64,000 nt of DNA from Macrostomum lignano (GCA_002269645.1 NIVC01001186.1:247293-311292), one strand, 5' to 3'. Shown: positions 6,498 to 45,344, numbered from the stretch's first letter. The notes: generated from the letters alone by a model not told the origin. A program made the numbers and translations.

Positions 6498-7247
<750 letters not shown>

Positions 7248-22426: not shown

Positions 22427-23633
22427 ATGATGGCTGGCAATGGTAACCGAGGCGACAAGGAGACTGAGCAGCTCAGAAAGCTGTTTATTGGCGGCCTGAC
22501 GCCAAACGTGACAGAAGACGATCTGAAGGGCCACTTTGGTCAGTGGGGCGAGCTTGTTGACGTGGTGGTGATGAAGGACAAGGTGTCTGGCCGGTCTCGC
22601 GGCTTCGGCTTCGTCACCTACAAGGACGAGTCGAGCGTGGATGACGCGCAGGCGAACCGGCCGCACGTGCTCGACAACAAGGAGGTGGACACGAAGCGGG
22701 CGATGCCCCGGGGTGACGCGAACAAGGACGAGAGCCACGTGAGAGTGGAGAAGCTGTTTGTGGGTGGTCTGAAGCCGGAGACCACCGAGGACGATCTGCG
22801 CGAGTATTTCGGCTCCTACGGTGAGGTTGCGTCAGCGGAGATTGCCGTGATGCGGGAGACTGGCAAGCCGCGCGGCTTCGGCTTCGTCACGTTCAAGGAC
22901 TACGATCCGGTGGACAAGGCGATTCTGTACAAGCCGCACAACATCGGCGGCAATCCGCGAGTGGACTGCAAGAAGGCCCTGTCCAAAGAGCAGATGGCCG
23001 AGGTGAAGGCTCGCCAAGCTTCCGGGTTCAACGTTCGCGGCGGCTTCGCTGGGCGCGGCGGCGGCGGCGGCGGCGGCTATGGGGGTGGCTACGGAGGCGG
23101 ATATGGCGGCGGCTATGGAGGCGGCTACGGTGGAGGCTACGGCAATGGGACCTATGCTGGTGGCTATGGCGACGGCGGCTACGGCGGTGGCTATGGCGAG
23201 GCTGGTTACGCCGGAGGTTACGCCGCCGGTGCCGACATGGGCGGCTACAGCGAAGGTGGTGAAGGCGCCTACGGCAATGGCGCAGCGGCTGGCGGCGGTT
23301 TCGGCTCCTACGGCAGCCAAGGTTACGCTGGCGGCCCCGCCAAGCCGGTTGGCGGATTCGGCGGCGGCCCGCAGCGATTCCAGCCGTACGGCGCCGGCGG
23401 CCGTGGTGGAGGTCGCGGACGCGGCGGCGGTGCCACTGGTGGGTTCCGGGGTGGTCGTGGTGAGTGTTGTTAGCGAGCCGGTAGGCTTAGTTTTTGGCGC
23501 ATTTATTTTCAATTGCAAAATTGCTGGTAAAGAATTGCGCTCAAAATTAAAACTCGCTATATGGGATTAAGATATTTTTGCTCTAATATTCATCTTGTAA
23601 ATTTCACCGCAAAATATTGCAGGCGGTTACTAA
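22427..23633 (+). CDS. HNRNPA1: hnRNP A1/A2-like protein, copy 1 (2 RRMs + Gly/Tyr-rich low-complexity domain); exons 22427-23459 and 23623-23633
   Basis: KETEQLRKLFIGGL, RSRGFGFVTY, KLFVGGL and RGFGFVTF; PY-NLS-like QRFQPY. Donor G|GTGAGT at 23460 and acceptor attgcag at 23622 give the ending RGGY*. The symbol marks the family, not proven orthology. Confidence 0.9.
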
Positions 23634-25549: not shown

Positions 25550-26649
25550 ATGATGGCTGGTAACCGAGGCGACAAGGAGACTGAGCAGCTCAGAAAGCTG
25601 TTCATTGGCGGCCTGACGCCAAACGTGACAGAAGACGATCTGAAGGGCCACTTTGGCCAGTGGGGCGAGCTTGTTGACGTGGTGGTGATGAAGGACAAGG
25701 TGTCTGGCCGGTCTCGCGGCTTTGGCTTCGTCACCTACAAGGACGAGTCGAGCGTGGATGACGCGCAGGCGAACCGGCCGCACGTGCTCGACAACAAGGA
25801 GGTGGACACGAAGCGGGCGATGCCCCGGGGTGACGCGAACAAGGACGAGAGCCACGTGAGAGTGGAGAAGCTGTTTGTGGGCGGTCTAAAGCCGGAGACC
25901 ACCGAGGACGATCTGCGCGAGTATTTCGGCTCCTACGGTGAGGTTGCGTCAGCGGAGATTGCCGTGATGCGGGAGACTGGCAAGCCGCGCGGCTTCGGCT
26001 TCGTCACGTTCAAGGACTACGATCCGGTGGACAAGGCGATTCTGTACAAGCCGCACAACATCGGCGGCAATCCGCGAGTGGACTGCAAGAAGGCCCTGTC
26101 CAAAGAGCAGATGGCCGAGGTGAAGGCTCGCCAAGCTTCCGGGTTCAACGTTCGCGGCGGCTTCGCTGGGCGCGGCGGCGGCGGCGGCTATGGGGGTGGC
26201 TACGGAGGCGGATATGGCGGCGGCTATGGAGGCGGCTACGGTGGCTATGGAGGTTACGGTGACGCAGGCTACGGTGGCTACGGGGATGCCGTAGGCTACG
26301 ACGCCGGAGGCTACAGCGAAGGTGGCGAAGGCGCCTACGACAATGGCGGCGGTTTCGGCTCCTACGGCAGCCAAGGCTACGCTGGCGGCCCCGCCAAGCC
26401 GGTTGGCGGATTCGGCGGCGGCCCGCAGCGATTCCAGCCGTACGGCGCCGGCGGCCGTGGTGGTGGTCGCGGACGTGGCGGCGCCGGCATTGGCGGCGGC
26501 TTTCGCGGTGGCCGTGGTGAGTGTCAAGGTTGATTTGCTTTAGTGAAATAAAATTTTGTTAAAAATGCACTTTTATACTAAATAACTTATTTGCGATCCG
26601 CCAAACCCCCTGTGTCGATGACTTTGCAGGCGGGCGTGGCGGCTATTAG
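25550..26649 (+). CDS. HNRNPA1: hnRNP A1/A2-like protein, copy 2; exons 25550-26516 and 26630-26649
   Basis: The RRMs are identical in amino-acid sequence to copy 1. Donor at 26517 and acceptor ctttgcag at 26629 give GGRGGY*. The true start is ATG 25550; the listed ORF start at 25520 is a TTG. Confidence 0.9.
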
Positions 26650-27475
26650 ACCGGGAGGAACTCTGATTGACAGCTCGACTGCAAAGGATTTTAAAGCTGT
26701 GCAGTGAACACGATTTCATAATATATATGTTATATATGAATATATATGAACTCGATCTTTTCTCCTGCCGTTCTGCTCTTGTCTATGTGTTGTGTTTTGG
26801 CTTTTGTATTGTGCATTCTGCTTTTTTATGAAGAAGCAATGTTGTCTGCGCAAGCAGTTGCTGGTCTTTTACCATAAATAAGTTTTAGTTTCTCAATTAG
26901 CGGCCCGTGAAACTTGAAAGTTAACACCTGTGCTGATAATTGCGCAATTATTGAATTATCGTTAATGAAATTTCATGGCAGCAGTTGCTGGGGTCTCTGT
27001 TAGTTTTTGTGTAAAAAATATTTTTTAAACAAAATTTAATATTCGTTATGTATTCAAATATACCGAATGGGTTTAAAGAGTTGAAGGCATGCAGTTTTTG
27101 TTCATTCTCAAATGTCTCGAGTCAGTTAATCGAAATTGTCACAAGGCAAATTTACAATCCCGAGCTATGCCTGGTCCTTGACTTCGTTTCTTTGCTGAGC
27201 CGGCTTTAAATGAAACAAAAAACTGAATCGTTGAATTCCAATGAGTTTTGAAAATATTCAATTTTTCAAATTCCATTCCTGTCTGGTTAAGAAAGTTGGC
27301 TAATTCGAAATTTTTTATATTCTTTAAAAAACGCTTGAAAATGTTTGGTTAGCAAAGTTTTATAAATAAAATCTCCAATCAGTTTTCGTTATACTTTTTC
27401 AAACACAGAACACATTGTTCGTCGCTTGCATTCAGCTCAAGACATTGAAATCAAATTGCAAAGAGATATTCTGTG

Positions 27476-30400
27476 ATGGCTGTCCAAAAGCTAACTGTTT
27501 TCCTAATATTGGCGGCCATTACTCTCGGCTTTGGTGAGCGAATACTTTTGGTTTTGATTATTATCAACTGTTAGAAATTTCTGATGAAGCGCAGTCTTAG
27601 TTTACACAGAATAACTATTGGTCTGCAATAAAATAATGTCTTGCCTTATAGCTCTGATGTTCATAAAACTTTTCGTTTAGAAAATTAGGATTCTATGGTA
27701 ATTTTATATCCCACGTACATGTACTGTGCAAAAAAATTATGAGAATGGTACAGCTAAATTTATTGGTTTTATGAATCTATACTATAATTCTTAGTTAATC
27801 ACTAAGAGCCTCTTCATATCGATGGTTCTGGTTCTGGAATATGGTTCGAGAAATTTTATCGAACCGCTGTCATGTTTACACTTTAACAGTAAAATATATT
27901 TGAAATCGTCAAGTTTTTATTATTGTTATATAATTATTCCGTTTTTTGTCATATCCAAGGCAAAACAAAGTCAAAGAACGACAAAATTAAATTGTAAAAA
28001 CTGTCAAACATAAAATGGGTATCGGAAGCTCCTCATATTACACTGGTTCTGGTTCTAGAACCGATTGCCGTGAAGAGGCTCTTAACAAAATGAAACGGAA
28101 TGATAAAAATAGATTCATAAAACCAATGACTTGAGTTGTGCCATATTTTATAAATTTTTGGCATAGGCCGGACATGCACGCTTTATGAAAATCAATTGAG
28201 AAAAGAACGCAAGACATCAAAAGATGAACAACTGTTGGTCTCCACTTCTATCAAAAGCAATAAGAATATTCGTGATAAAAAATAAAAACCTATACTCCGT
28301 ACTTTTTAAAAGAAATCTGATTATTATAAGGTTTAATAAAAATTAGTTTATCAAATAATTGTTATAAACGCTGAATATCAACTTTTTGAGCTTAAGTTCG
28401 TTTTTAAATGCGTGAAAGCCAACTAACCAGCTAGAAAACCTGACATTTGAAAGAAAACTTCACACATCTGCAGTAAACTGCAAACTTAAGCTTTAATTAC
28501 AGTATTACATTTTGCAGCCCAGGATGACCCCTTCGAGCCTTCAATTTTCGGTAAGTATAGTTGCACTCTTTAAATTACATGTAAACATACATGCATGTAC
28601 AGACTACGCCAACTATGTTAATTGTGGTGCTCCATAATGTACACGTGCATATTTACATGTACATGTATACCCACATTCAGGGGCGTCGCCATGGATTCAT
28701 GTTGGGAGGACAAAGCCAAGAAGCTACATGTACATGCACATGACCATTGCAACATGCACATCATTTTAAGAATCGGTGCGTCAGCGCTCATGTAGGCGCC
28801 GCAGGCATTTCTTTTGGTGCTGCAGGCACTCATTTTAGCGCCACAGGCATTCACTTTAGCGCCACGTGCAGGCACTCATTTTAGCGCCGCAAGCACTCAT
28901 TTTGGCACCCCATGCACTCATTTTAGCGTCGCAGGAACTTATTATGGTACATGTACCAAAGGACTCATTTAGCGCCACAGGCACTCATTTTGGCACCCCA
29001 GGCACTTATTTTAGCGTCGCAGGAACTTAATATGGTACATGTACCAAAGGACTCATTTAGCGCCACAGGCACTCATTTTAGTGCCACAGGCACTCATTTT
29101 GGCGCCGCAGACGCCGGGCGCTATATTTTGTCGCCGTGAAACAAAATTCTTGATGTCCATAACGGCAATTAAACGCGGGTCAAAAGGTAGGCCGTGGCGG
29201 GGACAAAGCATGCAATAGCATGTCCCCCATGGCTTTTACTGGGGGGACACATGTCCCCCCCCTGTCTTCTCCGGTGGCGACGCCCCTGTCTACATTCGCA
29301 TTATATTTCATTCCCACCTCAACTTTGAATCAAACTATTTTTTAGCGATTTCCGGCGACATTGATAGCCATAACGATGCAAAACCAATCAGTAAGTATAT
29401 GATAGTATACTATATGATGATACATTGTAGGGAGGGACAGCTGGGGCAGATAGAATGAAACAGCTGTGAAATGATTCGATTTTTATAGCAGCGTTATACT
29501 CATAAATCCGGCACTAATTTACTGTCACCGTATTTAAATATGTCCGAACAGCTTTGCACGATTTGACAGAGGAGCAAGCGTTGTTTGGTGAGCTGCAAAT
29601 TATATCCACGTTCGCATATTCATAATTGCATAATTATTGACTGTTACATACACACAGTTCAAGCATTGCTTAAATAAAACACTGAAAATATTTTAGCTGT
29701 CATTAACTTCGGACCGTCGATTTCTGGTGAGCATATAATGAATTTATTCATTTTACTATCTAAATATTATAATCATAATTCTAATAGATCGATTTCACCT
29801 GCCCCAATCGACAGATGTGCAACTGACAGCTCATAGCCAGCTCATATTGCGCGACACAAACTGTTCCAAGTAGCTCAAGAGAATCGAGCCCCCGACCTTT
29901 TAGTCATGAGTCCGAAGCTCTAACTACTAGTAGGCTATACAAACCACAAGCGTCGCACTCACGACTCGAAGGTCAGGGGTTCGATTCCCAATCTCACTGG
30001 AACGATTTATGTCCTTGAGAAAGACGTGTGTGCAACCCCCCCCCAGTCCTTGGACTGAACAGCCGTACGCAGCCTTCAGATGCGCCGCGCAATAGCTGCG
30101 GCTGAGCTGTCGGTTGCACATCTTACCAAATTTTGACAGGTGTAATCAATAATAATAATAATATAATAATCAATAATCAAAATTAACCAAGATAATTAAA
30201 GGCTTATACGGTTCTATACCGCTTCAGGCGCAGACGATGAGGACACCGGTCCAGGTGAGCTAATTTATATTTGTGCAGCAATGTGCCTATTATGAACCTG
30301 TTAATTAGGGAGCTTTACTGACCATATATAGTGGGTTTAAGTTTTATTGTGATTAGTTTGATGCTGTTATAGATCAGGTGAAATCTCTGACCAGACAGGT

Positions 30401-33400
30401 ATGCACACCAGGTAAAAAACAGGTAATATAAGTGGAGTAACGGTCTACATAATGTAAATAATGTAAAAATGTACAGATTTCCCATTTGAATAAAGAAGCA
30501 AAAAAGTAATCAATAAATTAGAAAGAATCCATCGTGCACCGCACCGGCTTAGCCATCTCCGTCACTGAAGCCATTGGCTTTTAAGACGACCAGGTAGAAA
30601 TCTTGTTTAGGTAAAAATAATTGTTTACAAAATAATGGCTGACCACTGGAACTTTAAGAAAGGAGCATTTTTATTTCATGGAATCGACAGACAATGTTAA
30701 CAGTAAATTAAACACCCCGGCTTGCAAGTAAACACCCCGGCTAGTAATTAAACACCCCGGCTTGAAATTAAACACCCAGCTAGCAATTAAACACCCAGCT
30801 AGCAATTAAACACCCAGCTAGCAATTAAACACCCCGGCAAGCAATTAAACACCCCGGCAAGCAATTAAACACCCCGGCTTGCAAGTAAACACCCGGCTAG
30901 TAATTAAACACTCCGGCTAGCAATTAAACACCCAGCTAGCAATTAAACACCCAACTAGCAATTAAAAACCCAGCTAGCAATTAAACACCCCGGCAAGCAA
31001 TTAAACACCCCGGCAAGCAATTAAACACCCCGGCTTGCAAGTAAACACCCGGCTAGTAATTAAACACCCCGGCTAGCAATTAAACACCCAGCTAGCAATT
31101 AAACACCCCGGCAGGCAATTAAACACCCCGGCTTGCAAGTAAACACCCGGCTAGTAATTAAACACTCCGGCTAGCAATTAAACACCCAACTAGCAATTAA
31201 ACACCCAGCTAGCAATTAAACACCCCGGCAAGCAATTAAACACCCCGGCAAGCAATTAAACACCCCGGCAAGCAAGTAAACACCCGGCTAGTAATTAAAC
31301 ACCCCGGCTAGCAATTAAACACCCAGCTAGCAATTAAACACCCAACTAGCAATTAAACACCCAGCTAGCAATTAAACACCCCGGCAAGCAATTAAACACC
31401 CCGGCAAGCAATTAAACACCCCGGCTGGCAATTAGACACCCAGCTAGCAATTAAACAAAACGCATGTAGATAACAGATCAAAAAAGTCGTCTAATAACGA
31501 GTAGCGAGAGACGAATATGAAAAGAATCTTTTACAGCATGTGTGAAAACAGGGCATATTCATAGGTAGAATATATCCTACTTCCTGCGGTAAGTACCTCA
31601 TCAATATTATCCCGACTGCTTATAATCGAATTATACATTAACCGCTTTCAGTCCCGTCGCCGCCACCAACTGAGAAGCCGACAGGTGAGTCAGGTGATAA
31701 ATATTTAATTAGCGCTTAATCAAACTCATAAACTTGATAATTATGTCATTTCAGTCCCACCGCCGCCACCAACTGAGAAGCCGACAGGTGAGTCAGGTGA
31801 TAAATATTTAATTAGCGCTTAATCAAACTCATAAACTTGATAATTATGTCATTTCAGTCCCACCGCCGCCACCAACTGAGAAGCCGACAGGTGAGTCAGG
31901 TGATAAATATTTAATTAGCGCTTAATCAAGCCAATAAACTTGATAATTCTGTCATTTTAGTCCCACCGCCGCCACCAACTGAGAAGCCGACAGGTGAGTC
32001 AGGTGATAAATATTTAATTAGCGCTTAATCAAACTCATAAACTTTATAATTCTGTCATTTCAGTCCCACCGCCGCCACCAACTGAGAAGCCGACAGGTGA
32101 GTCAGGTGATAAATATTTAATTAGCGCTTAATCAAGCCAATAAACTTGATAATTATGTCATTTCAGTCCCACCGCCGCCACCAACTGAGAAGCCGACAGG
32201 TGAGTCAGGTGATAAATATTTAATTAGCGCTTAATCAAGCCAATAAACTTGATAATTCTGTCATTTTAGTCCCACCGCCGCCACCAACTGAGAAGCCGAC
32301 AGGTGAGTCAGGTGATAAATATTTAATTAGCGCTTAATCAAACTCATAAACTTTATAATTCTGTCATTTCAGTCCCACCGCCGCCACCAACTGAGAAGCC
32401 GACAGGTGAGTCAGGTGATAAATATTTAATTAGCGCTTAATCAAGCCAATAAACTTGATAATTATGTCATTTCAGTCCCACCGCCGCCACCAACTGAGAA
32501 GCCGACAGGTGAGTCAGGTGATAAATATTTAATTAGCGCTTAATCAAACTCATAAACTTGATAATTCTGTCATTTCAGTCCCACCGCCGCCACCAACTGA
32601 GAAGCCGACAGGTGAGTCAGGTGATAAATATTTAATTAGCGCTTAATCAAGCCAATAAACTTGATAATTATGTCATTTCAGTCCCACCGCCGCCACCAAC
32701 TGAGAAGCCGACAGGTGAGTCAGGTGATAAATATTTAATTAGCGCTTAATAAGTGTGGAGTAACTTGCAAGAACTGCGAGAGTCTGGAGTTTGGAGAGTG
32801 TGGAGCTTGGAGAGTGTGGAGTTTGGAAATTATGGAGTTTTGGAAAGTGTGGAGTTTGGAAAGTGTGAAGTTTTGAAATTGTGGAGTTTGGAAAGTGTGA
32901 AGTTTGGAAAGTGTGGAGTTTGGAGAGTGTGGAGTTTGGAAAGTGTGGAGTTTGGAAAGTGTGGAGTTTGGAAAGTGTGGAGTTTGGAAAGTGTGGAGTT
33001 TGGAGAGTGCGGAGCTTGGAGAGTGTGTAGTTTGGAGAGTGTGGAGTTTGGAAAGTGTGGAGTTTGGAGAGTGCGGAGCTTGGAAGGTGTGAAGTTTGGA
33101 AAGTGTGAAGTTTGAAAAGTGTGAAGTTTGGAAAGTGTGGAGTTTGGAGCGTGCGGAGCTTGGAAAGTGTGGAGTTTGGAAAGTGTGGAGTTTGGAGAGT
33201 GTGGAGTTTGGGGAGTGTAGTTTGGAGACTGTGGAGTTTGGAAAGTGTGGAGTTTGGAGCGTGCGGAGCTTGGAAAGTGTGGAGTTTGGAAAGTGCGGAG
33301 CTTGGAAAGTGTGGAGTTTGGAGAGTGTGGAGTTTTTCAAATTTATTTATTAATTAGCTGGTGTAAAGACATTTTCGGTGACTTACAGTTCCAGAATCGA

Positions 33401-36400
33401 TCACTACGACACCTAAAACTTCAAAGCCGAAAGGTGAGCAGCCTTCATCTTGTCAATAAATGCTACTTTATTTAAGAAAACGAAAATAAGGTACATGCAA
33501 GTTCTAAAGCACTTATGTTTTCGTTTCAGTTCGTGAATGTAAGTTGAATTGTGGAATGTTTTGTTTTAATTTTGCTCTACTGATCACAGACTCCACAATG
33601 AGAGCTGCAGTTACTGATGAAGCTTTGGCTTCAACAACAATAAAAACCGCACAACTGCAGTTGAATTCGTTGGCTGCTACGCAAATGACCACGGCACCGA
33701 GACGGCCCTGGATGATATACCGCGGAGCCACCCGGAAATGACGGTAGTCGACTGTTACTTCTTTTGCACCCTGAGATTTGCCAACTATTTTGGAATTTTT
33801 GACGCAACCAAATGCTACTGCGGATTTACGATCAACACGACCCAAGTGGTGCAGGACCGCTGCAGGCTCACTTGTCCCGGAAATCCATTGGAAATCTGCG
33901 GCGGCAGCAGTGCAATCAGCATTTACGTTTTGCCGAAACCGAAAGTAGTTAGTCGGCCAGGTGAGTGTCTATGAATCGGGGTAAGTGTCCATAGGGTGTC
34001 CGTTAATCAAGGTACGTGTCTATAGGGTGAGTGTCCATTAATCGGGTTTAGTGTCCATAGGATGAGTGTCCATATTCGGGGTCAATGTCCATAGGATGAG
34101 TGTTCATAATCGGGGTAAGTGTCCATAGGGTGTCCGTTAATCAAAGTAAGTGTCTATAGGGTGAGTGTCCATTAATCGGGGTAGGTGTCCATAGGATGAG
34201 TCCATAATCGGGGTAGGTGTTTATTGGATGAGTCCATAATCGGGGTAAATGTCCATAGGATCTGTCCATAATCGGGGTATGTGTCCATAGGATGAGTGTC
34301 CATTAATCGGGGTATGTGTCCATAGGGTGAGTGTCCATTAATCGGGTAGGTGTCCATTGGATGAGTGTCCATTAATCGGGTAGGTGTCCATTGGATGAGT
34401 GTCCATTAATCGGGTTAAGTGTCCATTGGATGAGTGTCCATATTCGGGGTAAATGTCCATAGGATGAGTGTTCATAATCGGGGTAAGTGTCCATAGGGTG
34501 TCCGTTAATCAAAGTATGTGTCTATAGGGTGAGTGTCCATTAATCGGGCTAGGTGTCCATAGGATGAGTCCATAATCGGGGTAGGTGTTTATTGGATGAG
34601 TCCATAATCGGGGTAAATGTCCATAGGGTGAGTATCCATAATCGGGGTAAGTGTCCATAGGGTGAGTATCCATAATCGGGGTAAGTGTCCATAGGGTGAG
34701 TATCCATAATTGGGGTAAGTGTCCATAGGGTGAGTATCCATAATTGGGGTAAGTGTCCATAGGGTGATTATCCATAATTGGGGTAAGTGTCCATAGGGTG
34801 ATTATCCATAATTGGGGTAAGTGTCCATAGGGTGAGTATCCATAATTGGGGTAAGTGTCCATAGGGTGAGTATCCATAATTGGGGTAAGTGTCCATAGGG
34901 TGAGTATCCATAATTGGGGTAAGTGTCCATAGGGTGAGTATCCATAATTGGGGTAAGTGTCCATAGGGTGAGTATCCATAATTGGGGTAAGTGTCCATAG
35001 GGTGAGTATCCATAATCGGGATAAGTGTCCATAGGGTGAGTATCCATAATTGGGGTAAGTGTCCATAGGGTGAGTATCCATAATTGGGGTAAGTGTCCAT
35101 AGGGTGAGTATCCATAATTGGGGTAAGTGTCCATTGGATGAGTGTCCATTAATCGGGTTAAGTGTCCATTGGATGAGTGTCCATATTCGGGGTAAATGTC
35201 CATAGGATGAGTGTTCATAATCGGGGTAAGTGTCCATAGGGTGTCCGTTAATCAAAGTATGTGTCTATAGGGTGAGTGTCCATTAATCGGGCTAGGTGTC
35301 CATAGGATGAGTCCATAATCGGGGTAGGTGTTTATTGGATGAGTCCATAATCGGGGTAAATGTCCATAGGGTGAGTATCCATAATCGGGGTAAGTGTCCA
35401 TAGGGTGAGTATCCATAATCGGGGTAAGTGTCCATAGGGTGAGTATCCATAATTGGGGTAAGTGTCCATAGGGTGAGTATCCATAATTGGGGTAAGTGTC
35501 CATAGGGTGATTATCCATAATTGGGGTAAGTGTCCATAGGGTGATTATCCATAATTGGGGTAAGTGTCCATAGGGTGAGTATCCATAATTGGGGTAAGTG
35601 TCCATAGGGTGAGTATCCATAATTGGGGTAAGTGTCCATAGGGTGAGTATCCATAATTGGGGTAAGTGTCCATAGGGTGAGTATCCATAATTGGGGTAAG
35701 TGTCCATAGGGTGAGTATCCATAATTGGGGTAAGTGTCCATAGGGTGAGTATCCATAATCGGGATAAGTGTCCATAGGGTGAGTATCCATAATTGGGGTA
35801 AGTGTCCATAGGGTGAGTATCCATAATTGGGGTAAGTGTCCATAGGGTGAGTATCCATAATTGGGGTAAGTGTCCATTGGATGAGTGTCCATTAATCGGG
35901 TTAAGTGTCCATTGGATGAGTGTCCATATTCGGGGTAAATGTCCATAGGATGAGTGTTCATAATCGGGGTAAGTGTCCATAGGGTGTCCGTTAATCAAAG
36001 TATGTGTCTATAGGGTGAGTGTCCATTAATCGGGCTAGGTGTCCATAGGATGAGTCCATAATCGGGGTAGGTGTTTATTGGATGAGTCCATAATCGGGGT
36101 AAATGTCCATAGGGTGAGTATCCATAATCGGGGTAAGTGTCCATAGGGTGAGTATCCATAATCGGGGTAAGTGTCCATAGGGTGAGTATCCATAATTGGG
36201 GTAAGTGTCCATAGGGTGAGTATCCATAATTGGGGTAAGTGTCCATAGGGTGAGTATCCATAATTGGGGTAAGTGTCCATAGGGTGAGTATCCATAATTG
36301 GGGTAAGTGTCCATAGGGTGAGTATCCATAATTGGGGTAAGTGTCCATAGGGTGAGTATCCATAATCGGGGTAAATGTTCATAGGGTGAGTGTCCATAAT

Positions 36401-36888
36401 CGGGATAGGTGTCCATAGGGTGAGTATCCATAATTGGGGTAAGTGTCCATTAATCGGTCCGTCATTCTATGAACACCTTCTCAAGTACATAGAAATACAT
36501 ACAAATTGTACAACCCTGAAGCCTAAGATGAATTGTTATTATGGATAAACAGTAAAAAGATTTTTAATTATTGCAACTTTCAGAAGATCCTGTTGGCTGC
36601 TATTTTGCCAGTGATTCATCAACGCTGGGAGGACCCAAACTGTCCAGCTCGGACATGACTCAGTCAGTTTGCGCCAGTGAGTGTGCCAAGTACCTGACCA
36701 AATATTTCGGCTTGATGACAAAGGACTCACAAGGGAGCTGCCATTGCGGCAACGAAATTCCATCTGGGGAGCAAAACCAATACGACATGAGCTTCTGCCA
36801 GTACAAGTGCCCCGGGGTGAGATTCCACATGGAAGTGTGCGGGAGCGACATGTTTATGCTGGTGTTCAAACTGAATATACAGTCCTGA
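27476..36888 (+). CDS. Secreted micro-exon gene: signal peptide, acidic micro-exons, 11x VPPPPPTEKPT, Thr-rich linker, two WSC domains
   Basis: Exons 27476-27533 (MAVQKLTVFLILAAITLGF), 28518-28550, 29346-29390, 30228-30254, 11 x 33 nt from 31652 to 32714, 33389-33433, 33530-33538, 33590 (or 33661)-33960 and 36584-36888; all junctions are GT-AG phase 1. WSC signatures: FVGCY...MTVVDCYFFC...YFGIFDATKCYCG...CRLTCPGNPLEICGG and PVGCY...MTQSVCASEC...YFGL...CHCG...CQYKCPG...VCG. A frame break lies near 33645. Confidence 0.8.
28678..29288. mobile_element. hAT-like MITE in intron 2 of the micro-exon gene, with internal ~21-bp tandem repeats
   Basis: 14-bp TIR caggggcgtcgcca / tggcgacgcccctg; flanks cccacatt / tctacatt (6/8 identical). 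Confidence 0.75.
29814..30122. mobile_element. Two divergently oriented tRNA-derived SINE-like copies
   Basis: The plus copy has aaggtcaggggttcgattccc (B-box-like); the minus copy has aaaggtcgggggctcgattctc. Both end in a shared tail, tgagctgtc(g/a)gttgcacatc. Confidence 0.6.
30710..31455. repeat. 19-20-bp minisatellite (aaacaccccggctagcaatt)
   Basis: Tandem units read directly. Confidence 0.92.
31652..32750 (+). repeat. 103-bp tandem array, 11 units, each containing acceptor + 33-nt exon + donor
   Basis: Exon starts at 31652, 31755, 31858, 31961, 32064, 32167, 32270, 32373, 32476, 32579 and 32682. The unit is tttcag|TCCCACCGCCGCCACCAACTGAGAAGCCGACAG|gtgagt with 70-nt introns. Confidence 0.92.
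32770..33335. repeat. 16-bp minisatellite (gtggagtttggaaagt)
   Basis: Tandem units read directly. Confidence 0.92.
33961..36450. repeat. 34-bp minisatellite (gggtgagtatccataattggggtaagtgtccata; a dimer of 17-mers) with a 743-bp higher-order duplication
   Basis: The identical 248-aa pseudo-ORFs at 34509 and 35252 are offset by 743 bp. Confidence 0.93.
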
Positions 36889-37369
36889 AACTCAGTTCAG
36901 GCCGGAGTGAACTAGTGCGAGTTTAAACAGAAACTCGAATCTCGAATAAATAAAAGAAGTAAATCGCAAAAAGTTGAAATTCTTTGTTTATTTCTTTTTA
37001 TTGCATTTTAATTTTCATTATATCCCTCGTTCTGCTGATCCCAAATGACATCAACTCTCTTGAATGCTGCAAAATGACTTCGGTAAATGACTGGTGTATA
37101 TCACACTCCTCTAAGCCACACCTGAATGCACATCCATGACTTTTAGCCCAGCAATTGGGAGGGAACAAAAAGCAATGAAGGCGGAAGCCTAGTTTGAAAT
37201 ATTCTGTTGCTTTAAAAGTTATTTGCTTCTCCAAGTTTCTGCAAGTTAAACGGGGGTGGGAAGCCGGGAGCTACCCGCGGATCAGCCCTGGGAGGGGCTC
37301 TGCCGCTGAGGGGCACTAACAGCGGCATATAGCCCGAGATTGGACCCTGACGTCTGGGCCAGGGGAATC

Positions 37370-38820
37370 TGCCAACCCAAGCCTATGGACTAAGACACCG
37401 CCAACCCAAACCTATGGACTAAGACACCGCCAACCCAAACCTATGGACTAAGACACCGCCAACCCAAGCCTATGGACTAAGACACCGCCAACCCAAACCT
37501 ATGGACTAAGACACCGCCAACCCAAGCCTATGACTAAGACACCGCCAACTCAAACCTATGAACTAAGACACCGCCAACCCAAACCTATGACTAAGACACC
37601 GCCAACCCAAACCTATGGACTAAGACACCGCCAACCCAAGCCTATGACTAAGACACCGCCAACTCAAACCTATGAACTAAGACACCGCCAACCCAAACCT
37701 ATGAACTAAGACACCGCCAACCCAAGCCTATGAACTAAGACACCGCCCGCCAACCCAAGCCTATGAACTAAGACACCGCCAACCCTGTAGAAAAATAACT
37801 GAAGAAATAACACTGGCCAGTGAATACGTTGACAATAACAACTTGAAAACCAAAGTTAGGATGAAAAGGCTCCTCCAGCAGTATATTTATTTGCGTGGTT
37901 GAGAGAGGGGGGTAGAGAATAGATAAGAAGAAAATGGGTAAGAAGGGCGAGGGCTAAAATGCTCTAACGAGACCGAGGGGGGGGGGGCTGACTGAAAACT
38001 CACCGATCGATAATCGGAAAACAAGATAAGAATGTACAGTACGTAGAGCGCGGTAGATAGAAGATGGACTAGGCACACAGGGAATGGAAGAAAATGAAAA
38101 GGGAGCAAGTGAATTCTATTAGCGCAAGCTGAAATTTCGCGACAAACCCAAACCTATGGACTAAGACACCGCCAACCCAAGCCTATGACTAAGACACCGC
38201 CAACTCAAACCTATGAACTAAGACACCGCCAACCCAAACCTATGACTAAGACACCGCCAACCCAAACCTATGGACTAAGACACCGCCAACCCAAGCCTAT
38301 GGACTAAGACACCGCCAACCCAAGCCTATGGACTAAGACACCGCCAACCCAAGCCTATGACTAAGACACCGCCAACTCAAACCTATGAACTAAGACACCG
38401 CCAACTCAAACCTATGAACTAAGACACCGCCAACCCAAACCTATGAACTAAGACACCGCCAACCCAAGCCTATGAACTAAGACACCGCCCGCCAACCCAA
38501 GCCTATGAACTAAGACACCGCCAACCCAAACCTATGGACTAAGACACCGCCAACCCAAGCCTATGGACTAAGACACCGCCAACCCAAACCTATGGACTAA
38601 GACACCGCCAACCCAAGCCTATGGACTAAGACACCGCCAACCCAAGCCTATGGACTAAGACACCGCCAACCCAAGCCTATGGACTAAGACACCGCCAACC
38701 CAAGCCTATGGACTAAGACACCGCCAACCCAAGCCTATGGACTAAGACACCGCCAACCCAAGCCTATGGACTACGACACCGCCAACCCAAGCCACCGCCA
38801 ACTAAGACACCGCCAACCCA
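37370..38820. repeat. 29-30-bp minisatellite (ccaacccaagcctatggactaagacaccg) interrupted by a ~350-bp unrelated insert (37790-38145)
   Basis: Tandem units on both sides of the insert. Confidence 0.9.
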
Positions 38821-39359
38821 AAAGTGGAACCAGAGACGGTGCTAAGACCGAGTCCACCCAAGCCACCACCCGGCAGACAAGTCCCAGGAGTGCGCGAAAA
38901 AAGATTGGAAAAATCTTGAAATACTACTGAAAAGCGGTCCGAGAGCGGGGAGACGCCAAAGTCTCGGAAATGGCTGTATTTTGGAGCGAGTCTGGAAGGC
39001 TTGTTTCCGAGGGCGAGACTCCTATCAGGCCACCAGAAAACCTATTGGGCTGCAAGCCACAAGGGTGTCACCTATCCAGCTCTATATTGGAGGCCAGGCC
39101 AAGGGGTCGGGAAGGAGCAACTTCAGAATTGCAGTTCAATTGTGGGAATTCGATGAAAACTTTGAAATTTGAGCAGAAAAAAGTGACCATTAAATTTGGT
39201 TGGCAGTCACGGTAATTTATATTGTTTTTTAATAAAACACAAATTAATCGCTCTCTCACAATAAAATATATAATTAGGACAACAGATATATTGCACCTAC
39301 CAGCATAGAATGTTGAATTCAATCAAATTTGAATAATAATATAATAATTGTCAAAACTT

Positions 39360-42300
39360 TCAGCGCCGTTTAATAGCAACGTAAATATTCCAAAGAAGAG
39401 ACAGGCCGCACATGAACAGCACTCGGTACTGAAATTATTAATACAAATTATTTATAATATATATTCATAAAGACTCATGCATACACAATGTTCAAAAACA
39501 AAGACTCACCTTTTGCGGTACATAGTTGATATTAATAAACTGGAACAGGGACCAGATCTTCACGTTCATTTTCAGCACGTCTAAGAAGCTGTCCTTGACT
39601 TTGGCGTGCGCGAACGCCAAGGATCGGCCCTGCGAGATTAAAGATTTTGTCCGAATTAAATACTCTATTATCACTTTTCTACTTAGCATTAGTAGCCATT
39701 CGTGTCCCAATCTACATCTACTCAATTCCTATCTACCCAATCCCTATCTACCCAATCCCTATCTACCCAATCCCTATCTACCCAATTCCTATCTACCCAA
39801 TTCCTATCTACCCAATCCCTATTTACCCAATCCCTATCTACCCAATCCCTATCTACCCAATCCCTATCTACCCAATCCCTATCTACCCAATCCCTATCTA
39901 CCCAATCTCCATCTACCTAATCCCTATCTACCCAATCCCTATCTACCCAATCCCTATCTACCCTATCCCTATCTACCTAATCCCTATTTACCCAATCCCT
40001 ATCTACCCAATCCCTATCTACCCAATCCCTATCTACCCAATCCCTATCTACCCAATCCCTATCTGCCTAATCCCTATCTACCCAATTCCTATCTACCCAA
40101 TTCCTATCTACCCAATCCTTATCTACCCAATCCCTATCTACCTAATCCCTATCTACCCAATCCCTATCTACACAATCCCTATCTACCTAATCCCTATCTA
40201 CGAGTACCTAATCCCTTATCTACCTAATATCCATCTACCCAATCCCTATCTACCCAATCCCTATCTACCCTATCCCTATCTACCTAATCCCTATCTACCC
40301 AATTCCTATCTACCCAATCCCTATCTACACAATCCCTATCTACCTAATCCCTATCTACCCAATCCCTATCTACCCAATCCCTATCTACCCAATCCCTATC
40401 TACCCAATCCCTATCTACCCAATCACTATCTACCCAATCCCTATCTACCCAATCCCTATCTACCCAATCCCTATCTACCCAATCTCCATCTACCTAATCC
40501 CTATCTACCCAATCCCTATCTACCGAATCCCTATCTACCCTATCCCTATCTACCCAATCCCTATCTACCCAATCCCTATCTACCCGATCCCTATCTACCC
40601 AATCCCTATCTACCCAATCCCTATCTACCTAATCCCTATCTACCCAATTCCTATCTACCCAATCCCTATCTACCCAATCCCTATCTACCCAATCCTTATC
40701 TACCCTATCCCTATCTACCCAATCCCTATCTACCCAATCCCTATCTACCCAATCCCTATGTACCCAATCTCCATCTACCTAATCCCTATCTACCCAATCC
40801 ATATCTACCCAATCCCTATCTACCCAATCCCTATCTACCCAATCCCTATCTACCCAATCCCTATCTACCCAATCCCTATCTACCCAATCCCTATCTACCC
40901 AATCCCTATCTACCCTATCCCTATCTACCTAATCCCTATCTACCCAATCCCTATCTACCCAATCCCTTTCTACCCAATCCCTATCTACACAATCCCTATC
41001 TACCTAATCCTTATCTACCTAATCCCTTATCTACCTAATATCTATCTATCCAATCCTATCTACCCAATCCCTATGTACCCAATCTCCATCTACCTAATCC
41101 CTATCTACCCAATCCATATCTACCCAATCCCTATCTACCCTATCCCTATCTACCTAATCCCTATCTACCCAATCCTTATCTACCCAATCCTTATATACCC
41201 AATCCCTATCTACCCTATCCCTATCCATCTAATCCCTATCTACCCAATCCCTTATCTACCCAATCTCCATCTACCCAATCTCCATCTACTCTATCCCTTA
41301 TCTACCCAATCTCCATCTACTCTATCCCTTATCTACCCAATCTCCATCTACTCTATCCCTTATCTACCCCATCTCCATCTACCAAATTTCCATCTACCCA
41401 TTCTCTATCTAGTCTATCCTTATCTACCAATCTCCATCTACCCAATCCCTACGTACCCAATCTCCATCTACCCTATCTATCTACCATATCCAACTAATCT
41501 TCATCTACCTCTCAGTCTCACCTCGAACAGCGGCACTGAATAGTAGAGCAACAGCAGGTAAGGCGGTGCCAACAGCAGCCTGTCAATCAGAGTGCGTTTC
41601 AACGCTACAAACTGTTGGTCAGAGTCCTTGGGCAGAGCCCTGTCCAACTGGCGATAGAAAGCGTGAATCAACGGGCCAGAAATAAAGAAGCCAAAGGCTG
41701 AATAAGCGAAGGTGCTTCTCAGGCTAAACTGGCCGCCAGTGCCGGGTTTGGGCGCGATCAGCTGTGACAGAATGTCGCCTAGGCCGAAAATTGTGCCGCT
41801 AAGATGACGGATGGTTGTTGAGGGGTGAAGCTTGAATATTAATCATTGGATTTGTGACCCGCAACCATTCGGCTCACTGCTAGCTTATATTATCTCACAC
41901 TCTTTGGTTCAAAGGTGTCACCTGACCCCTCTCGATTCATATCCTTCACAGAAGGGGTCACCTGACCCCTCCCGTTTCATATACTTCACTGACAGGGGTC
42001 ACCTGACCCTCCCGATTCATATTCTTCACTGACAGGGGTCACCTGACCCCTCCCGATTCATATACTTCAGACAGGGGTCATATGACCCTCCCAAATCATA
42101 TACTTTAGACAGGGGTCATATGACCCTCCCAAATCATATACTTCACTGACAGGGGTCATATGACCCTCCCGATTCATATACTTCACTGACAGGGGTCATT
42201 GACCCTCCCGATTCATATACTTCACTGACAGGGGTCACCTGACCCCTCCCGATTCATATACTTCACTGACAGGGGTCTCCTGACCCCTCCCGATTCATAT

Positions 42301-43309: not shown

Positions 43310-43389
43310 AGCAACTGTGTTCAAGAGACTCGGTGAGGACAGCTCATTAACGTACATTGGTGGTGAGGGCGGGTGGAGAGCGAGGTAAT

Positions 43390-44245
43390 GAGAGTGTACA
43401 TTGGGGATGAGGGTCGGGGAGAGCCAGTGTACATTGGGGATGAGGGTCGGGGAGAGCCAGTGTACTTTGGGGATGAGGGTCAGGCGAAAGCCAGTGTACA
43501 TTAAGGATGAGGGTCAGGCGAAAGCCAGTGTACATTAAGGATGAGGGTCAGGCGAAAGCCAGTGTACATTAAGGATGAGGGTCAGGCGAAAGCCAGTGTA
43601 CATTGGGGATGAGGGTCAGGGGAGAGCCAGTGTACATTGGGGATGAGGGTCGGGGAGAGCCAGTGTACATTGGGGATGAGGGTCGGGGAGAGCCAGTGTA
43701 CATTGGGGATGAGGGTCGGGGAGAGCCAGTGTACATTGGGGATGAGGGTCAGGGGAGAGCCAGTGTACATTGGGGATGAGGGTCGGGGAGAGCCAGTGTA
43801 CATTGGGGATGAGGATCGGGGAGAGCCAGTGTACATTGGGGATGATGGTCAGGGGAAAGCCAGTGTACATTGGGGATGATGGTCAGCGGAAAGCCAGTGT
43901 ACATTGGGGATGATGGTCAGCGGAAAGCCAGTGTACATTGGGGATGATGGTCAGCGGAAAGCCAGTGTATATTGGGGATGATGGTCAGCGGAAAGCCAGT
44001 GTACATTGGGGATGATGGTCAGGGGAAAGCCAGTGTACATTGGGGATGATGGTCAGCGGAAAGCCAGTGTACATTGGGGATGATGGTCAGCGGAAAGCCA
44101 GTGTACATTGGGGATGATGGTCAGCGGAAAGCCAGTGTATATTGGGGATGATGGTCAGCGGAAAGCCAGTGTATATTGGGGATGATGGTCAGCGGAAAGC
44201 CAGTGTACATTGGGGATGATGGTCAGCGGAAAGCCAGTGTACACC
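43390..44245. repeat. 33-bp minisatellite (ggggagagccagtgtacattggggatgagggtc) just upstream of PXMP2
   Basis: Tandem units read directly. Confidence 0.92.
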
Positions 44246-45330: not shown

Positions 45331-45344
45331 TATCTAGCTAGCGG

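What the first reader, a model, noticed from the sequence alone, without database searches (positions are those of the whole stretch)
27476..36888. Secreted micro-exon gene ending in two WSC domains
Seen: after a signal-peptide exon come internal exons of 33, 45, 27, 11x33, 45 and 9 nt, all multiples of 3 and phase 1-1, so any subset can be skipped in frame. The ORF track misses all of them. Established: this symmetric design defines schistosome micro-exon genes (MEGs), which generate secreted variants by exon skipping; WSC is a putative glycan-binding domain. Inference: a MEG-like variable-stalk lectin (mucus, adhesion or immune recognition), possibly in a free-living lineage and attached to a globular domain, which classical MEGs lack.
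Basis: partly seen in the sequence, partly recalled or inferred. Interest (0 to 1): 0.8.

Follow-up and report, generated by a model that had tools for sequence, protein, structure and literature searches.

The report
Flatworm seminal-fluid micro-exon WSC gene
[quoted passage not shown] It encodes a secreted seminal-fluid protein with 18 tiny in-frame exons ahead of two sugar-binding WSC domains, a gene layout so far associated mainly with parasitic flatworms.

Summary
**Observation: confirmed.**
- The window is an exact piece of the M. lignano Mlig_3_7 contig NIVC01001186.1.
- The locus is GenBank gene BOX15_Mlig001594g1.
Two more micro-exons were missed (36 nt and 30 nt).
- The full product is 416 aa: a signal peptide, an acidic segment, 11 copies of VPPPPPTEKPT, then two WSC domains.

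**Transcript support.** Published ISH primers and amplicon sizes (196, 614 and 864 nt) are reproduced only by splicing these micro-exons. They identify the gene as Mlig-pro21/-pro32/-pro51, which is prostate-gland limited and a seminal-fluid candidate. RNAi of pro32 reportedly raises partner "suck" behaviour.

**The 11×33 run.** It is a tandem array of 103-bp cassettes, each a 33-nt exon plus a 70-nt intron. The three gene copies carry 11, 7 and 8 cassettes, so stalk length varies at the DNA level, as in the schistosome SmPoMuc genes.

**Exon skipping: unresolved.** Short-read models carry 2, 2, 5 or 7 units, and assembly collapse could explain that.

**MEG status.** The gene meets an operational structural definition of a micro-exon gene. 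However, only 47% of the CDS is micro-exonic, it has globular domains, and it has no MEG homology.

**Paralogue.** Mlig-pro5 also has two 9-nt phase-1 micro-exons.

The parts
27361..27368 (+). TATAAATA box, about 40 nt upstream of the 5' end of the known transcript sequence
   Evidence: Motif position. The Mlig-pro51 forward primer, which lies in transcript sequence, starts at 27407. Promoter role is inferred.
27476..27533 (+). Exon 1 coding part (58 nt, ends in phase 1): signal peptide MAVQKLTVFLILAAITLGF. The 5'UTR reaches at least 27407.
   Evidence: Identical to the start of GenBank protein P0003.
28518..28550 (+). Micro-exon of 33 nt (AQDDPFEPSIF). An alternative acceptor at 28503 adds 15 nt in frame (VLHFA).
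   Evidence: The Mlig-pro32 forward primer spans exon 1 joined to 28503, and the 196-nt amplicon is reproduced exactly. The acceptor sequence is conserved in all 3 gene copies.
29346..29390 (+). Micro-exon of 45 nt (AISGDIDSHNDAKPI)
   Evidence: present in P0001-P0003.
29552..29587 (+).
   Evidence: Present in P0001-P0003. The Mlig-pro21 forward primer spans its junction with the next exon.
29697..29726 (+).
   Evidence: present in P0001-P0003.
30228..30254 (+). Micro-exon of 27 nt (GADDEDTGP)
   Evidence: The Mlig-pro32 reverse primer spans its junction with the first 33-nt unit.
30255..30569 (+). Intron sequence present in the de novo transcript RNA815_26553 (Mlig-pro51). It reflects read-through of the 27-nt exon donor. 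The ORF would end after 89 aa (…TGPGELIYICAAMCLL*) with no WSC domain.
   Evidence: The reverse primer maps to 30548-30569. The predicted amplicon is 613 nt against 614 published. Whether this is a mature isoform or pre-mRNA is unknown.
30706..31457 (.). Intronic 20-bp minisatellite (AATTAAACACCCCGGCTAGC, about 38 copies)
31646..32750 (+). Tandem array of 103-bp cassettes, each a 33-nt exon plus a 70-nt intron.
- Eleven exons start at 31652, 31755, 31858, 31961, 32064, 32167, 32270, 32373, 32476, 32579 and 32682; each is 33 nt.
- Unit 1 encodes VPSPPPTEKPT; units 2-11 encode VPPPPPTEKPT.
- A 309-bp higher-order repeat is visible: the intron variants of units 3-5 recur in units 6-8.
   Evidence: TRF period 103, 10.7 copies, 96% matches. 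Splice borders. Unit alignment. The homeologous copies have 7 and 8 units.
32781..33335 (.). Intronic 16-bp minisatellite (AGTGTGGAGTTTGGAA, about 35 copies)
33389..33433 (+). Micro-exon of 45 nt (VPESITTTPKTSKPK)
   Evidence: present in P0001-P0003.
33530..33538 (+). Micro-exon of 9 nt (TTCGTGAAT; VRE plus the first base of F)
   Evidence: Present in the models for g1 and g5, and required by the 864-nt Mlig-pro21 amplicon. Absent from the g18 model although the DNA there is intact.
33661..33960 (+). Exon of 300 nt, phase 1-1: WSC domain 1, with 8 cysteines
   Evidence: Pfam PF01822, best stretch aa 196-275 of the 394-aa model. tblastn.
33960..36450 (.). Intronic 34-bp minisatellite, about 74 copies, starting at the WSC1 donor site. 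Each unit contains GGTGAGT and GGTAAGT, which resemble 5' splice sites.
   Evidence: This intron is 2623 nt here, against 365 and 1517 nt in the other copies.
36584..36888 (+). Last coding exon (305 nt including the stop): WSC domain 2, with 8 cysteines
36945..36954 (+). Overlapping AATAAA poly(A) signals, 57 nt after the stop codon
   Evidence: Function is inferred.

Best explanation
**Identity (shown).** The locus is the annotated M. lignano gene BOX15_Mlig001594g1. It is one of three about 97%-identical homeologous copies (g1, g5, g18). The de novo transcripts of this gene are known from in situ screens as the prostate-gland-limited transcripts Mlig-pro21, -pro32 and -pro51. It therefore encodes a secreted seminal-fluid protein candidate.

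**Protein layout (shown).**
- a signal peptide;
- a 56-aa acidic segment (pI about 4) built from five unique micro-exons;
- a proline/threonine-rich stalk (VPPPPPTEKPT)n;
- a short Thr/Lys linker from a 45-nt and a 9-nt exon;
- two WSC domains, each on its own roughly 300-nt exon.

Every intron is in phase 1.

**How the stalk varies (shown).** The stalk is encoded by a tandem array of 103-bp cassettes, each a 33-nt exon plus a 70-nt intron with near-consensus splice sites. Because the cassette exon is symmetric (1-1), gain or loss of cassettes changes stalk length in 11-aa steps without breaking the frame. The three copies carry 11, 7 and 8 cassettes.

**Inferred steps.**
- Cassette number changes by unequal recombination or replication slippage. 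The 309-bp higher-order repeat supports this.
- The default splicing outcome is inclusion of most or all units, because the introns are short and identical.
- The stalk is an extended, probably O-glycosylated spacer that presents the glycan-binding WSC pair.
- The protein is transferred in the ejaculate and acts on the partner. This rests on a second-hand literature report that RNAi of Mlig-pro32 increases partner suck behaviour.

**Family context (shown).** The basic family plan of signal-peptide exon, phase-1 micro-exons, WSC1 exon and WSC2 exon is shared with the paralogue Mlig-pro5, which has only two 9-nt micro-exons.
For: **Source and annotation**
- The window matches NIVC01001186.1 exactly over 29,425 nt, and the annotated gene spans 27464-36888.
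- GenBank protein P0003 equals my spliced model except for the number of units.
- The annotation was built from RNA-seq (StringTie/TACO plus BLAT-mapped Trinity contigs).

**Link to the prostate transcripts**
- Brand et al. 2020 Additional file 16 maps Mlig001594.g5 to Mlig-pro21/32/51 and labels all three 'prostate' after Weber et al. 2018.
- Their primers sit on exon-exon junctions of my model.
- The published amplicon sizes are reproduced: 196 of 196, 613 of 614, and 864 = 7 units plus the 9-nt exon.

**Domains and relatives**
- Two WSC domains, E=1.4e-25. The closest solved WSC domains are 7PZ2 and KREMEN1.
- phmmer against 1.84 billion representatives hits only the WSC part, at 36% identity or less.

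**The array**
- Period 103, 96% matches. Copy numbers are 11, 7 and 8. The higher-order repeat is shown.
- Exons are more conserved than introns between copies: 0.98% against 3.3%, and 0.43% against 1.7%.

**Paralogue**
- Mlig-pro5 has two 9-nt phase-1 micro-exons. Its spliced model equals 304 nt of the published transcript and is collinear with our WSC pair (E=3e-22).

**Function**
- The RNAi effect of Mlig-pro32 on partner suck propensity is stated in bioRxiv 10.1101/734301.
- The two transcripts with that effect are named suckless-1 and suckless-2 in bioRxiv 10.1101/727685.
Against: - No transcript sequence of the array itself was available. All three GenBank models carry fewer units than the DNA (2 of 11, 5 of 7, 2 of 8). 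Full inclusion is therefore inferred, not shown.
- Glycan binding by these WSC domains, O-glycosylation of the stalk and transfer to the partner have not been tested for this protein.
- The RNAi phenotype is second-hand (an introduction citing a then-unpublished paper). I did not see the pro32-to-suckless name mapping written out.
- Signal-peptide cleavage was judged by eye, not with SignalP.
- Within the array, the exon-versus-intron difference in variable sites is not significant (Fisher p=0.43).
Confidence: 0.78

Rival explanations
1. The symmetric micro-exons are used as in schistosome MEGs: stochastic or regulated exon skipping produces a ladder of secreted isoforms with different stalk lengths and N-terminal peptides from each gene copy.
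For: - All 18 internal micro-exons and the WSC1 exon are phase 1-1, so any subset is in frame.
- Transcript models and contigs carry 2, 2, 5 and 7 units, against 11, 8 and 7 genomic units.
- The 9-nt exon is absent from the g18 model although its DNA and splice sites are intact.
- An in-frame alternative acceptor (+15 nt) at exon 2 is documented by a junction-spanning primer.
Against: - Identical 33-nt tandem repeats in mRNA are collapsed or looped arbitrarily by de Bruijn assemblers. They multi-map in STAR, which was run with up to 1000 multimaps.
- 9-nt exons are often missed by aligners. The GenBank model of Mlig-pro5 lost its whole 5' part with its two 9-nt exons.
- The 70-nt introns with consensus CAG|GTGAGT donors would favour neighbour-to-neighbour splicing (inference).
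- The one size-constrained contig holds 7 units, far more than the genome-guided models.
Confidence: 0.3
2. The gene also makes a genuine short, MEG-like product, Mlig-pro51. The donor of the 27-nt exon is not used, the transcript ends in the following intron, and an 89-aa secreted peptide results that is made almost only of micro-exons and has no WSC domains.
For: - De novo contig RNA815_26553 (724 nt, no BLAST hit) contains exons 1-6 spliced, plus at least 315 nt of the downstream intron. Its amplicon is reproduced at 613 of 614 nt.
- The read-through sequence and its stop codon are identical in all three copies.
- AATAAA motifs occur at 30489 and 30512.
Against: - The reverse primer lies downstream of both AATAAA motifs.
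- The contig probably stops where the 20-bp satellite begins, as expected for an assembled pre-mRNA of a very highly expressed gland transcript with a slowly removed 1.4-kb satellite-bearing intron.
- No poly(A) evidence was seen.
- Pfam finds nothing in the 89-aa product.
Confidence: 0.2
3. Only the few units present in the GenBank model are real exons. The remaining 33-nt units are intronic pseudo-exons, or the 11-unit count is an assembly artefact.
For: The GenBank model for this locus uses 2 of 11 units. The Mlig_3_7 assembly is known to be redundant and repeat-rich.
Against: - All 11 units have identical exon sequence and intact AG/GT borders, so nothing distinguishes used from unused units.
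- A de novo contig requires 7 units.
- Three independently assembled copies all show multi-unit arrays of 11, 7 and 8.
- The array is only 1.1 kb.
Confidence: 0.07
4. The product is an epidermal, mucus, adhesive-organ or immune lectin rather than a seminal-fluid protein.
For: The architecture is a WSC lectin-type pair on a mucin-like stalk. Other WSC-domain proteins appear in M. lignano adhesive-footprint proteomics tables.
Against: - All three probe sets for this gene are recorded as prostate.
- Mlig-pro numbers were given only to prostate-limited transcripts.
- Mlig001594 is absent from the parts of the adhesion paper's supplements that are held.
Confidence: 0.05

Closest known systems
[quoted passage not shown] 2010; Philippsen et al. 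2015, PMC4350168; Olson et al. 2020, PMC7653826)
   Same: - A signal-peptide exon is followed by a long run of very small symmetric exons divisible by 3, from 9 to 45 nt.
- The product is secreted from a gland.
- The mature N-terminal part is lineage-specific, with no detectable homologues.
- It passes Olson's operational criteria: 21 exons, 18 micro-exons, a run of 18.
   Different: - It comes from a free-living macrostomorphan flatworm.
- Micro-exons account for only 47% of the CDS.
- It ends in two globular WSC domains on ordinary 300-nt exons.
- Eleven of the micro-exons are one tandemly duplicated cassette with 70-nt introns.
- Exon skipping is not demonstrated.
- The product acts, by inference, on a mating partner rather than a host.
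SmPoMuc polymorphic mucins of Schistosoma mansoni (Roger et al. 2008, PMC2576457)
   Same: - A Pro/Thr-rich repeat region is encoded by a micro-exon (27 bp there, 33 nt here) that is tandemly repeated together with its flanking intron.
- The number of repeats differs between gene copies.
- Repeats are homogenised in a concerted-evolution pattern.
- The gene is studded with micro- and minisatellites.
   Different: - The cassette is about 1 kb in SmPoMuc and 103 bp here.
- No hammerhead ribozyme or any Rfam match is present in the window.
- There is no sequence similarity.
- The C-terminal part is a WSC pair.
- Expression is in the prostate of a free-living hermaphrodite rather than in sporocyst apical glands.
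Mlig-pro5 (RNA815_80.4; Arbore et al. 2015, PMC4490696), a paralogue in M. lignano
   Same: - It is prostate-gland specific.
- It has a signal-peptide exon ending in phase 1, phase 1-1 micro-exons, then one exon per WSC domain (297 and 295 nt).
- It is collinear over both WSC domains, with the inter-domain intron at the same place.
   Different: - It has only two 9-nt micro-exons and no acidic segment or proline stalk.
- Identity is 27%.
- Its reported RNAi phenotype is loss of MPr-1 antibody staining.
WSC-domain proteins (Pfam PF01822: fungal Wsc1-type sensors, KREMEN1, WSCD1/2)
   Same: Two canonical 8-cysteine WSC domains. The best solved matches are 7PZ2 (E=1.7e-7) and KREMEN1 (E about 3e-4).
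   Different: - It has no transmembrane segment, kringle/CUB or sulfotransferase part.
- Its nearest relatives are generic multi-WSC proteins of a diplonemid, oysters and fungi, at 36% identity or less.
Phase 1-1 modular extracellular proteins (the exon-shuffling rule; from my own knowledge, Patthy)
   Same: The signal-peptide exon ends in phase 1 and each domain sits on a 1-1 exon, so modules can be inserted or duplicated in the phase-1 intron without breaking the frame.
   Different: Here the inserted modules are not folded domains. They are 3-15-aa peptide segments and a tandemly amplified 11-aa unit.

Membership tests
Micro-exon gene (MEG), operational structural definition of Olson et al. 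2020 | [quoted passage not shown] | tested here: met
   21 exons, 18 micro-exons, a run of 18. The criteria are quoted. The 2-unit GenBank model also passes (12 exons, 9 micro-exons).
Micro-exon gene (MEG), classical schistosome sense | Symmetric micro-exons, with the same phase at both ends | tested here: met
   All internal exons start and end in phase 1.
Micro-exon gene (MEG), classical schistosome sense | Most of the coding region is represented by micro-exons, and the product is a small protein without known domains | tested here: not met
   588 of 1251 nt (47%) is micro-exonic. The two WSC domains occupy 605 nt. The definition is quoted. The longest S. mansoni MEG protein is 189 aa, against 416 aa here.
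Micro-exon gene (MEG), classical schistosome sense | N-terminal signal peptide; product secreted from glands or epithelia | tested here: met
   The n/h/c layout with GFA|Q was read directly from the sequence; SignalP was not run. Prostate-gland in situ patterns come from the literature.
Micro-exon gene (MEG), classical schistosome sense | Protein variants generated by skipping of micro-exons | tested here: inconclusive
   Models and contigs carry 2, 2, 5 and 7 units against 11, 8 and 7 genomic units. The 9-nt exon is absent from one model. All of this comes from short-read assemblies. An alternative acceptor (+15 nt) is shown.
Micro-exon gene (MEG), classical schistosome sense | Sequence homology to a described MEG family | tested here: not met
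   phmmer against 1.84 billion representatives found no match to residues 1-113 outside the gene's own cluster. A word-indexed search of the N-terminal part found nothing. MEGs evolve fast, so absence of a hit is weak evidence.
SmPoMuc-type tandem exon-repeat mucin gene | A micro-exon plus its intron is repeated in tandem, the number differs between gene copies, and it encodes a Pro/Thr/Ser-rich repeat | tested here: met
   103-bp cassette in 11, 7 and 8 copies. The stalk is 50% Pro and 19% Thr. SmPoMuc features are quoted.
SmPoMuc-type tandem exon-repeat mucin gene | Sequence homology to SmPoMuc; an intronic hammerhead ribozyme | tested here: not met
   No homologue of the non-WSC part was found. 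There are no Rfam matches in the window.
WSC domain proteins (PF01822) | Match above the Pfam gathering score; 8 conserved cysteines per domain | tested here: met
   89.8 bits against a cut-off of 27.8, in two stretches. Eight Cys are present in each domain, read directly from the sequence.
M. lignano prostate-limited seminal-fluid candidates (Mlig-pro1-76, Weber et al. 2018) | The transcript used for the prostate-limited in situ pattern derives from this gene | tested here: met
   Primers of Mlig-pro21, -pro32 and -pro51 map to this gene's exons and junctions, and the published amplicon sizes are reproduced.
M. lignano prostate-limited seminal-fluid candidates (Mlig-pro1-76, Weber et al. 2018) | The protein is transferred in the ejaculate | not testable with these tools
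   This needs ejaculate proteomics or a tagged protein. The only indirect support is the reported partner-behaviour effect of pro32 RNAi.

The most novel reading that the evidence does not exclude
MEG-type gene architecture is not an adaptation to parasitism. It is an older flatworm way of building fast-evolving secreted proteins for conflict interfaces.
- In the free-living M. lignano, prostate genes place runs of symmetric phase-1 micro-exons between the signal peptide and a lectin module.
- They would diversify the product both by unequal crossing-over of exon+intron cassettes and by exon skipping.
- The result would be a population of seminal-fluid isoforms that manipulate partner behaviour (the suck response).
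- This would give a genetically tractable model, with RNAi and transgenesis, for how MEG splicing works.
Probability: 0.2. Interest if true: 0.75.

Novelty: new variant of a known kind. Interest (0 to 1): 0.55.

Why it matters
**Evolutionary question.** Micro-exon gene organisation has been listed as a proposed gain of parasitic flatworms. Laumer et al. [quoted passage not shown] Olson et al. 2020 call curation of MEGs across flatworm lineages a high priority.

**What this locus adds.**
- It is a transcript-supported gene in an early-branching free-living flatworm that passes the structural MEG criteria.
- It combines those criteria with a SmPoMuc-like tandem exon cassette and a lectin module.
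- A paralogue, Mlig-pro5, also carries phase-1 micro-exons.
- The gene is not anonymous. It is a prostate-limited seminal-fluid candidate, and knock-down of one of its transcripts reportedly changes partner behaviour. Stalk-length variation could therefore be tied to a measurable phenotype in an organism with RNAi and transgenesis.

**Practical consequences.**
- Three numbered seminal-fluid candidates (pro21, pro32, pro51) are one gene present in three copies.
- Short-read annotation of such genes under-counts repeat units and loses micro-exons.

Tried and rejected
1. **Same gene as RNA815_80.4?** I first suspected the gene was RNA815_80.4, the published prostate transcript with two WSC domains. 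Its sequence is different, so it is a paralogue, Mlig-pro5.
2. **Relatives of the N-terminal and stalk part.** The word-indexed search found none. phmmer against all representatives hit only the WSC region. The best named hits are generic multi-WSC proteins of a diplonemid, oysters and fungi.
3. **SmPoMuc-like extras.** I looked for a hammerhead ribozyme or other structured RNA, and for tRNA-derived elements. There were no Rfam or tRNA hits.
4. **Selection within the array.** Variable sites number 1 of 33 in the exon and 7 of 70 in the intron. The difference is not significant (p=0.43), so I make no claim from it.
5. **Unit number from contig length.** I tried to infer unit number in RNA815_11100.2 from its length (1183 nt against 1358 nt). 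The unknown UTR ends make it indeterminate, so I dropped it.
7. **Promoter/terminator scan.** This tool is prokaryote-oriented and is irrelevant here.
8. **Literature.** I found no paper describing micro-exons in Macrostomum and no text mention of Mlig001594. The supplements of Grudniewska 2018 and Wunderer 2019 do not list the gene.
9. **Paralogues in the window.** There is no other WSC exon in the 64 kb.

Full report
**Where the window comes from**

A search with the WSC part of the spliced product returned two Macrostomum lignano proteins at 97-98% identity. A third cluster member, P0003 (PAA71100.1, BOX15_Mlig001594g1), is identical to the window's product apart from the number of repeat units. 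The 29,425-nt locus fetched for P0003 is an exact substring of the window, at window positions 17464-46888. The window is therefore contig NIVC01001186.1 of assembly Mlig_3_7 (GCA_002269645.1).

**The observation**

They splice into an open frame whose C-terminal half scores as two WSC domains (PF01822, E=1.4e-25, 89.8 bits against a 27.8 cut-off). Each domain has the eight cysteines.

They are 36 nt (29552-29587) and 30 nt (29697-29726), both phase 1-1 and both in all three GenBank proteins.

The complete model has 21 exons, of which 18 are micro-exons:
- 33, 45, 36, 30 and 27 nt;
- eleven of 33 nt;
- 45 and 9 nt.

The CDS is 1251 nt and encodes 416 aa. A TATAAATA box lies at 27361 and AATAAA signals at 36945.

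**Are the micro-exons in mRNA?**

The Mlig_3_7 annotation was derived entirely from RNA-seq, using STAR, StringTie and TACO plus BLAT-mapped de novo contigs. The GenBank models are therefore transcript evidence in their own right.

Independent evidence comes from Brand et al. 2020 (PMC7336406, Additional file 16). It assigns Mlig001594.g5 to three transcripts of the older de novo assembly MLRNA110815 and lists their in situ primers and amplicon sizes.

- **Mlig-pro32 (RNA815_11100.2).** The forward primer joins the end of exon 1 to an alternative acceptor 15 nt upstream of exon 2. The reverse primer joins the 27-nt exon to the first base of the 33-nt unit. My model gives 9+15+33+45+36+30+27+1 = 196 nt, the published size.
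- **Mlig-pro21 (RNA815_11100.1).** The forward primer spans the 36/30-nt exon junction and the reverse primer lies in WSC exon 2. The published 864 nt is obtained only with seven 33-nt units and the 9-nt exon included.
- **Mlig-pro51 (RNA815_26553).** The forward primer is in the 5'UTR (27407). The reverse primer lies in the intron after the 27-nt exon (30548-30569). Exons 1-6 spliced plus read-through gives 613 nt against 614 published.

That condition is not met.

A further check is sequence conservation between the three copies. Exons differ by 0.98% and 0.43%, and introns by 3.3% and 1.7%. The 258 nt of unique micro-exons show 1 and 0 mismatches.

**What the 11×33 run is**

It is a tandem array with period 103, 10.7 copies and 96% matches. 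Each cassette is a 33-nt exon (TCCCACCGCCGCCACCAACTGAGAAGCCGACAG) plus a 70-nt intron that begins with GTGAGT, so the donor reads CAG|GTGAGT, and ends with TTTCAG or TTTTAG. Ten exons are identical and encode VPPPPPTEKPT. The first differs at two bases and encodes VPSPPPTEKPT.

Intron variants repeat with a 309-bp higher-order period, units 3-5 matching units 6-8. This is a sign of recent three-cassette duplication.

The two other gene copies, L001 (g5) and L002 (g18), are collinear with the window at about 97% over exons, introns and flanks. They carry 7 and 8 cassettes. Stalk length therefore demonstrably varies at the DNA level in 11-aa steps. The symmetric phase is what allows that. The eleven exons count as one observation, not eleven.

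**Is there exon skipping?**

The GenBank models contain 2 of 11 units (g1), 5 of 7 (g5) and 2 of 8 (g18). The de novo contig contains 7, and its reverse primer matches g1 and g18 but not g5.

These numbers disagree with each other and with the DNA. They all come from short reads, in which identical 33-nt tandem repeats form loops in assembly graphs and multi-map. STAR was run allowing 1000 multimaps.

The 9-nt exon is missing from the g18 model although its DNA is intact. Aligners commonly lose 9-nt exons, though. The GenBank model of the paralogue Mlig-pro5 starts at an internal Met because its signal-peptide exon and two 9-nt exons were lost.

What is shown is one in-frame alternative acceptor (+15 nt) and one read-through form (pro51). 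The read-through form would encode an 89-aa peptide made only of micro-exons, but it may simply be an assembled pre-mRNA.

I rate substantial exon skipping at about 0.3. The short identical introns with consensus sites would, by inference, favour neighbour-to-neighbour splicing.

**What the gene is and does**

Mlig-pro numbers were given only to transcripts with prostate-limited in situ patterns (Weber et al. 2018). All three probe sets for this gene are recorded as prostate. Weber et al. themselves warned that some fragments might belong to one protein. Here pro21, pro32 and pro51 are one gene, in three copies.

The introduction of bioRxiv 10.1101/734301 states that RNAi of Mlig-pro31 and Mlig-pro32 substantially increased the suck propensity of mating partners. 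bioRxiv 10.1101/727685 names the two transcripts with exactly that phenotype suckless-1 and suckless-2. By inference this gene is one of the suckless genes. I did not see the name mapping written out.

The mature protein, about 43 kDa with pI 4.9, has three parts:
- a 56-aa acidic N-terminal segment;
- a 136-aa stalk that is 50% Pro and 19% Thr;
- a 202-aa WSC pair.

My mechanistic reading is inferred beyond the architecture. The proline stalk is an extended, probably O-glycosylated spacer of heritable variable length. It presents a carbohydrate-binding WSC pair, and an acidic peptide, in the ejaculate, where the protein acts on the partner's reproductive tract or on sperm.

**Relatives**

phmmer against 1.84 billion representatives found 2573 hits. 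All are to the WSC region, at 36% identity or less. The best named ones are multi-WSC proteins of Diplonema, oysters and fungi. Nothing matches the N-terminal or stalk part. The closest solved WSC domains are 7PZ2 and KREMEN1.

Within M. lignano, the paralogue Mlig-pro5 (RNA815_80.4) is prostate-specific, and RNAi against it abolishes MPr-1 antibody staining (Arbore et al. 2015). Its plan is the same:
- a 61-nt signal-peptide exon;
- two 9-nt micro-exons;
- a 297-nt WSC1 exon;
- a 295-nt WSC2 exon.

All its introns are in phase 1. My spliced model reproduces 304 nt of the published transcript exactly. The two proteins are collinear at 27% identity with E=3e-22. Phase-1 micro-exons between the signal peptide and the WSC module are therefore a family trait. 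The acidic segment and the amplified stalk are specific to Mlig001594.

**Comparison with known kinds**

| Test | Result |
|---|---|
| Olson et al. 2020 operational MEG criteria | Passed |
| Classical description: most of the CDS in very small symmetric exons, small domain-less secreted proteins | Failed on coding fraction (47%), on size and domains, and on homology |
| SmPoMuc-type array: a 27-bp exon repeated with its intron in about 1-kb units, up to about 20 times, differing between paralogues and homogenised by concerted evolution | Closest analogue of the array. Here the unit is 103 bp, and no ribozyme is present |

The overall plan also follows the classical phase 1-1 rule for modular extracellular proteins (my own knowledge). 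I therefore file it as a new variant: a hybrid of MEG and SmPoMuc architecture fused to a lectin module, in a free-living flatworm's seminal-fluid gene.

I found no paper describing micro-exon genes in Macrostomum.

**Verdict**

- The gene itself is already annotated and already studied as a prostate-limited seminal-fluid candidate.
- What appears undescribed is its micro-exon and cassette architecture, and the recurrence of micro-exons in a paralogue.
- Interest is 0.55.

Noticed in passing
window 33960-36450: The 34-bp intronic minisatellite (about 74 copies) begins exactly at the donor site of the WSC1 exon. Every unit carries GGTGAGT and GGTAAGT, giving roughly 150 sequences inside one intron that resemble 5' splice sites. 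This intron is 2623 nt here, against 365 and 1517 nt in the other two gene copies. Use of the first such site downstream would run into a stop codon shortly after WSC1, as read from the sequence.
   Followed up: partly
L004 4936-6614 (NIVC01000084.1), GenBank protein P0163 / BOX15_Mlig005381g2: The GenBank model of the paralogue Mlig-pro5 starts at an internal Met in the WSC1 exon. The true gene has a signal-peptide exon and two 9-nt micro-exons (5094-5102, 5512-5520), as proven by the published transcript. Micro-exons are therefore under-annotated in Mlig_3_7.
   Followed up: yes
window 22427-23473 and about 25550-26533 (+): Two intronless, tandemly duplicated hnRNP A/B-like genes, each with two RRM domains (E=1.8e-36) and a GGY-rich tail, lie just upstream. 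They are about 91% identical to each other and are present at all three homeologous loci.
   Followed up: partly
window 20954-22185 (-): A mariner/Mos1-type transposase remnant is split into two ORFs: HTH_48 at 21559-22185 and the partial DDE domain Transposase_1 at 20954-21619.
   Followed up: partly
whole window, e.g. 47850-51834, 39716-41485, 6499-7248: Minisatellite density is extraordinary. TRF reports 69 rows, including a 20-bp unit in 200 copies (4 kb) and a 15-bp unit in 117 copies. Many arrays create long spurious ORFs on both strands.
   Followed up: no
window 30706-31457: The 20-bp intronic satellite AATTAAACACCCCGGCTAGC contains the poly(A)-signal variant ATTAAA in every unit. It lies just downstream of where the Mlig-pro51 contig must end.
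   Followed up: no
window 12001-20000: An 8-kb stretch has much lower G+C (27-32%) than the rest of the window (41-56%). It was not examined.
   Followed up: no
window 37464-46888 (L003 20001-29425): Downstream neighbours lie on the minus strand: an Mpv17/PMP22-family gene and a DEAH-box helicase (DEAD, Helicase_C, HA2). They are syntenic at the g1 and g5 loci; at the g18 locus the fetched stretch shows only Mpv17.
   Followed up: no
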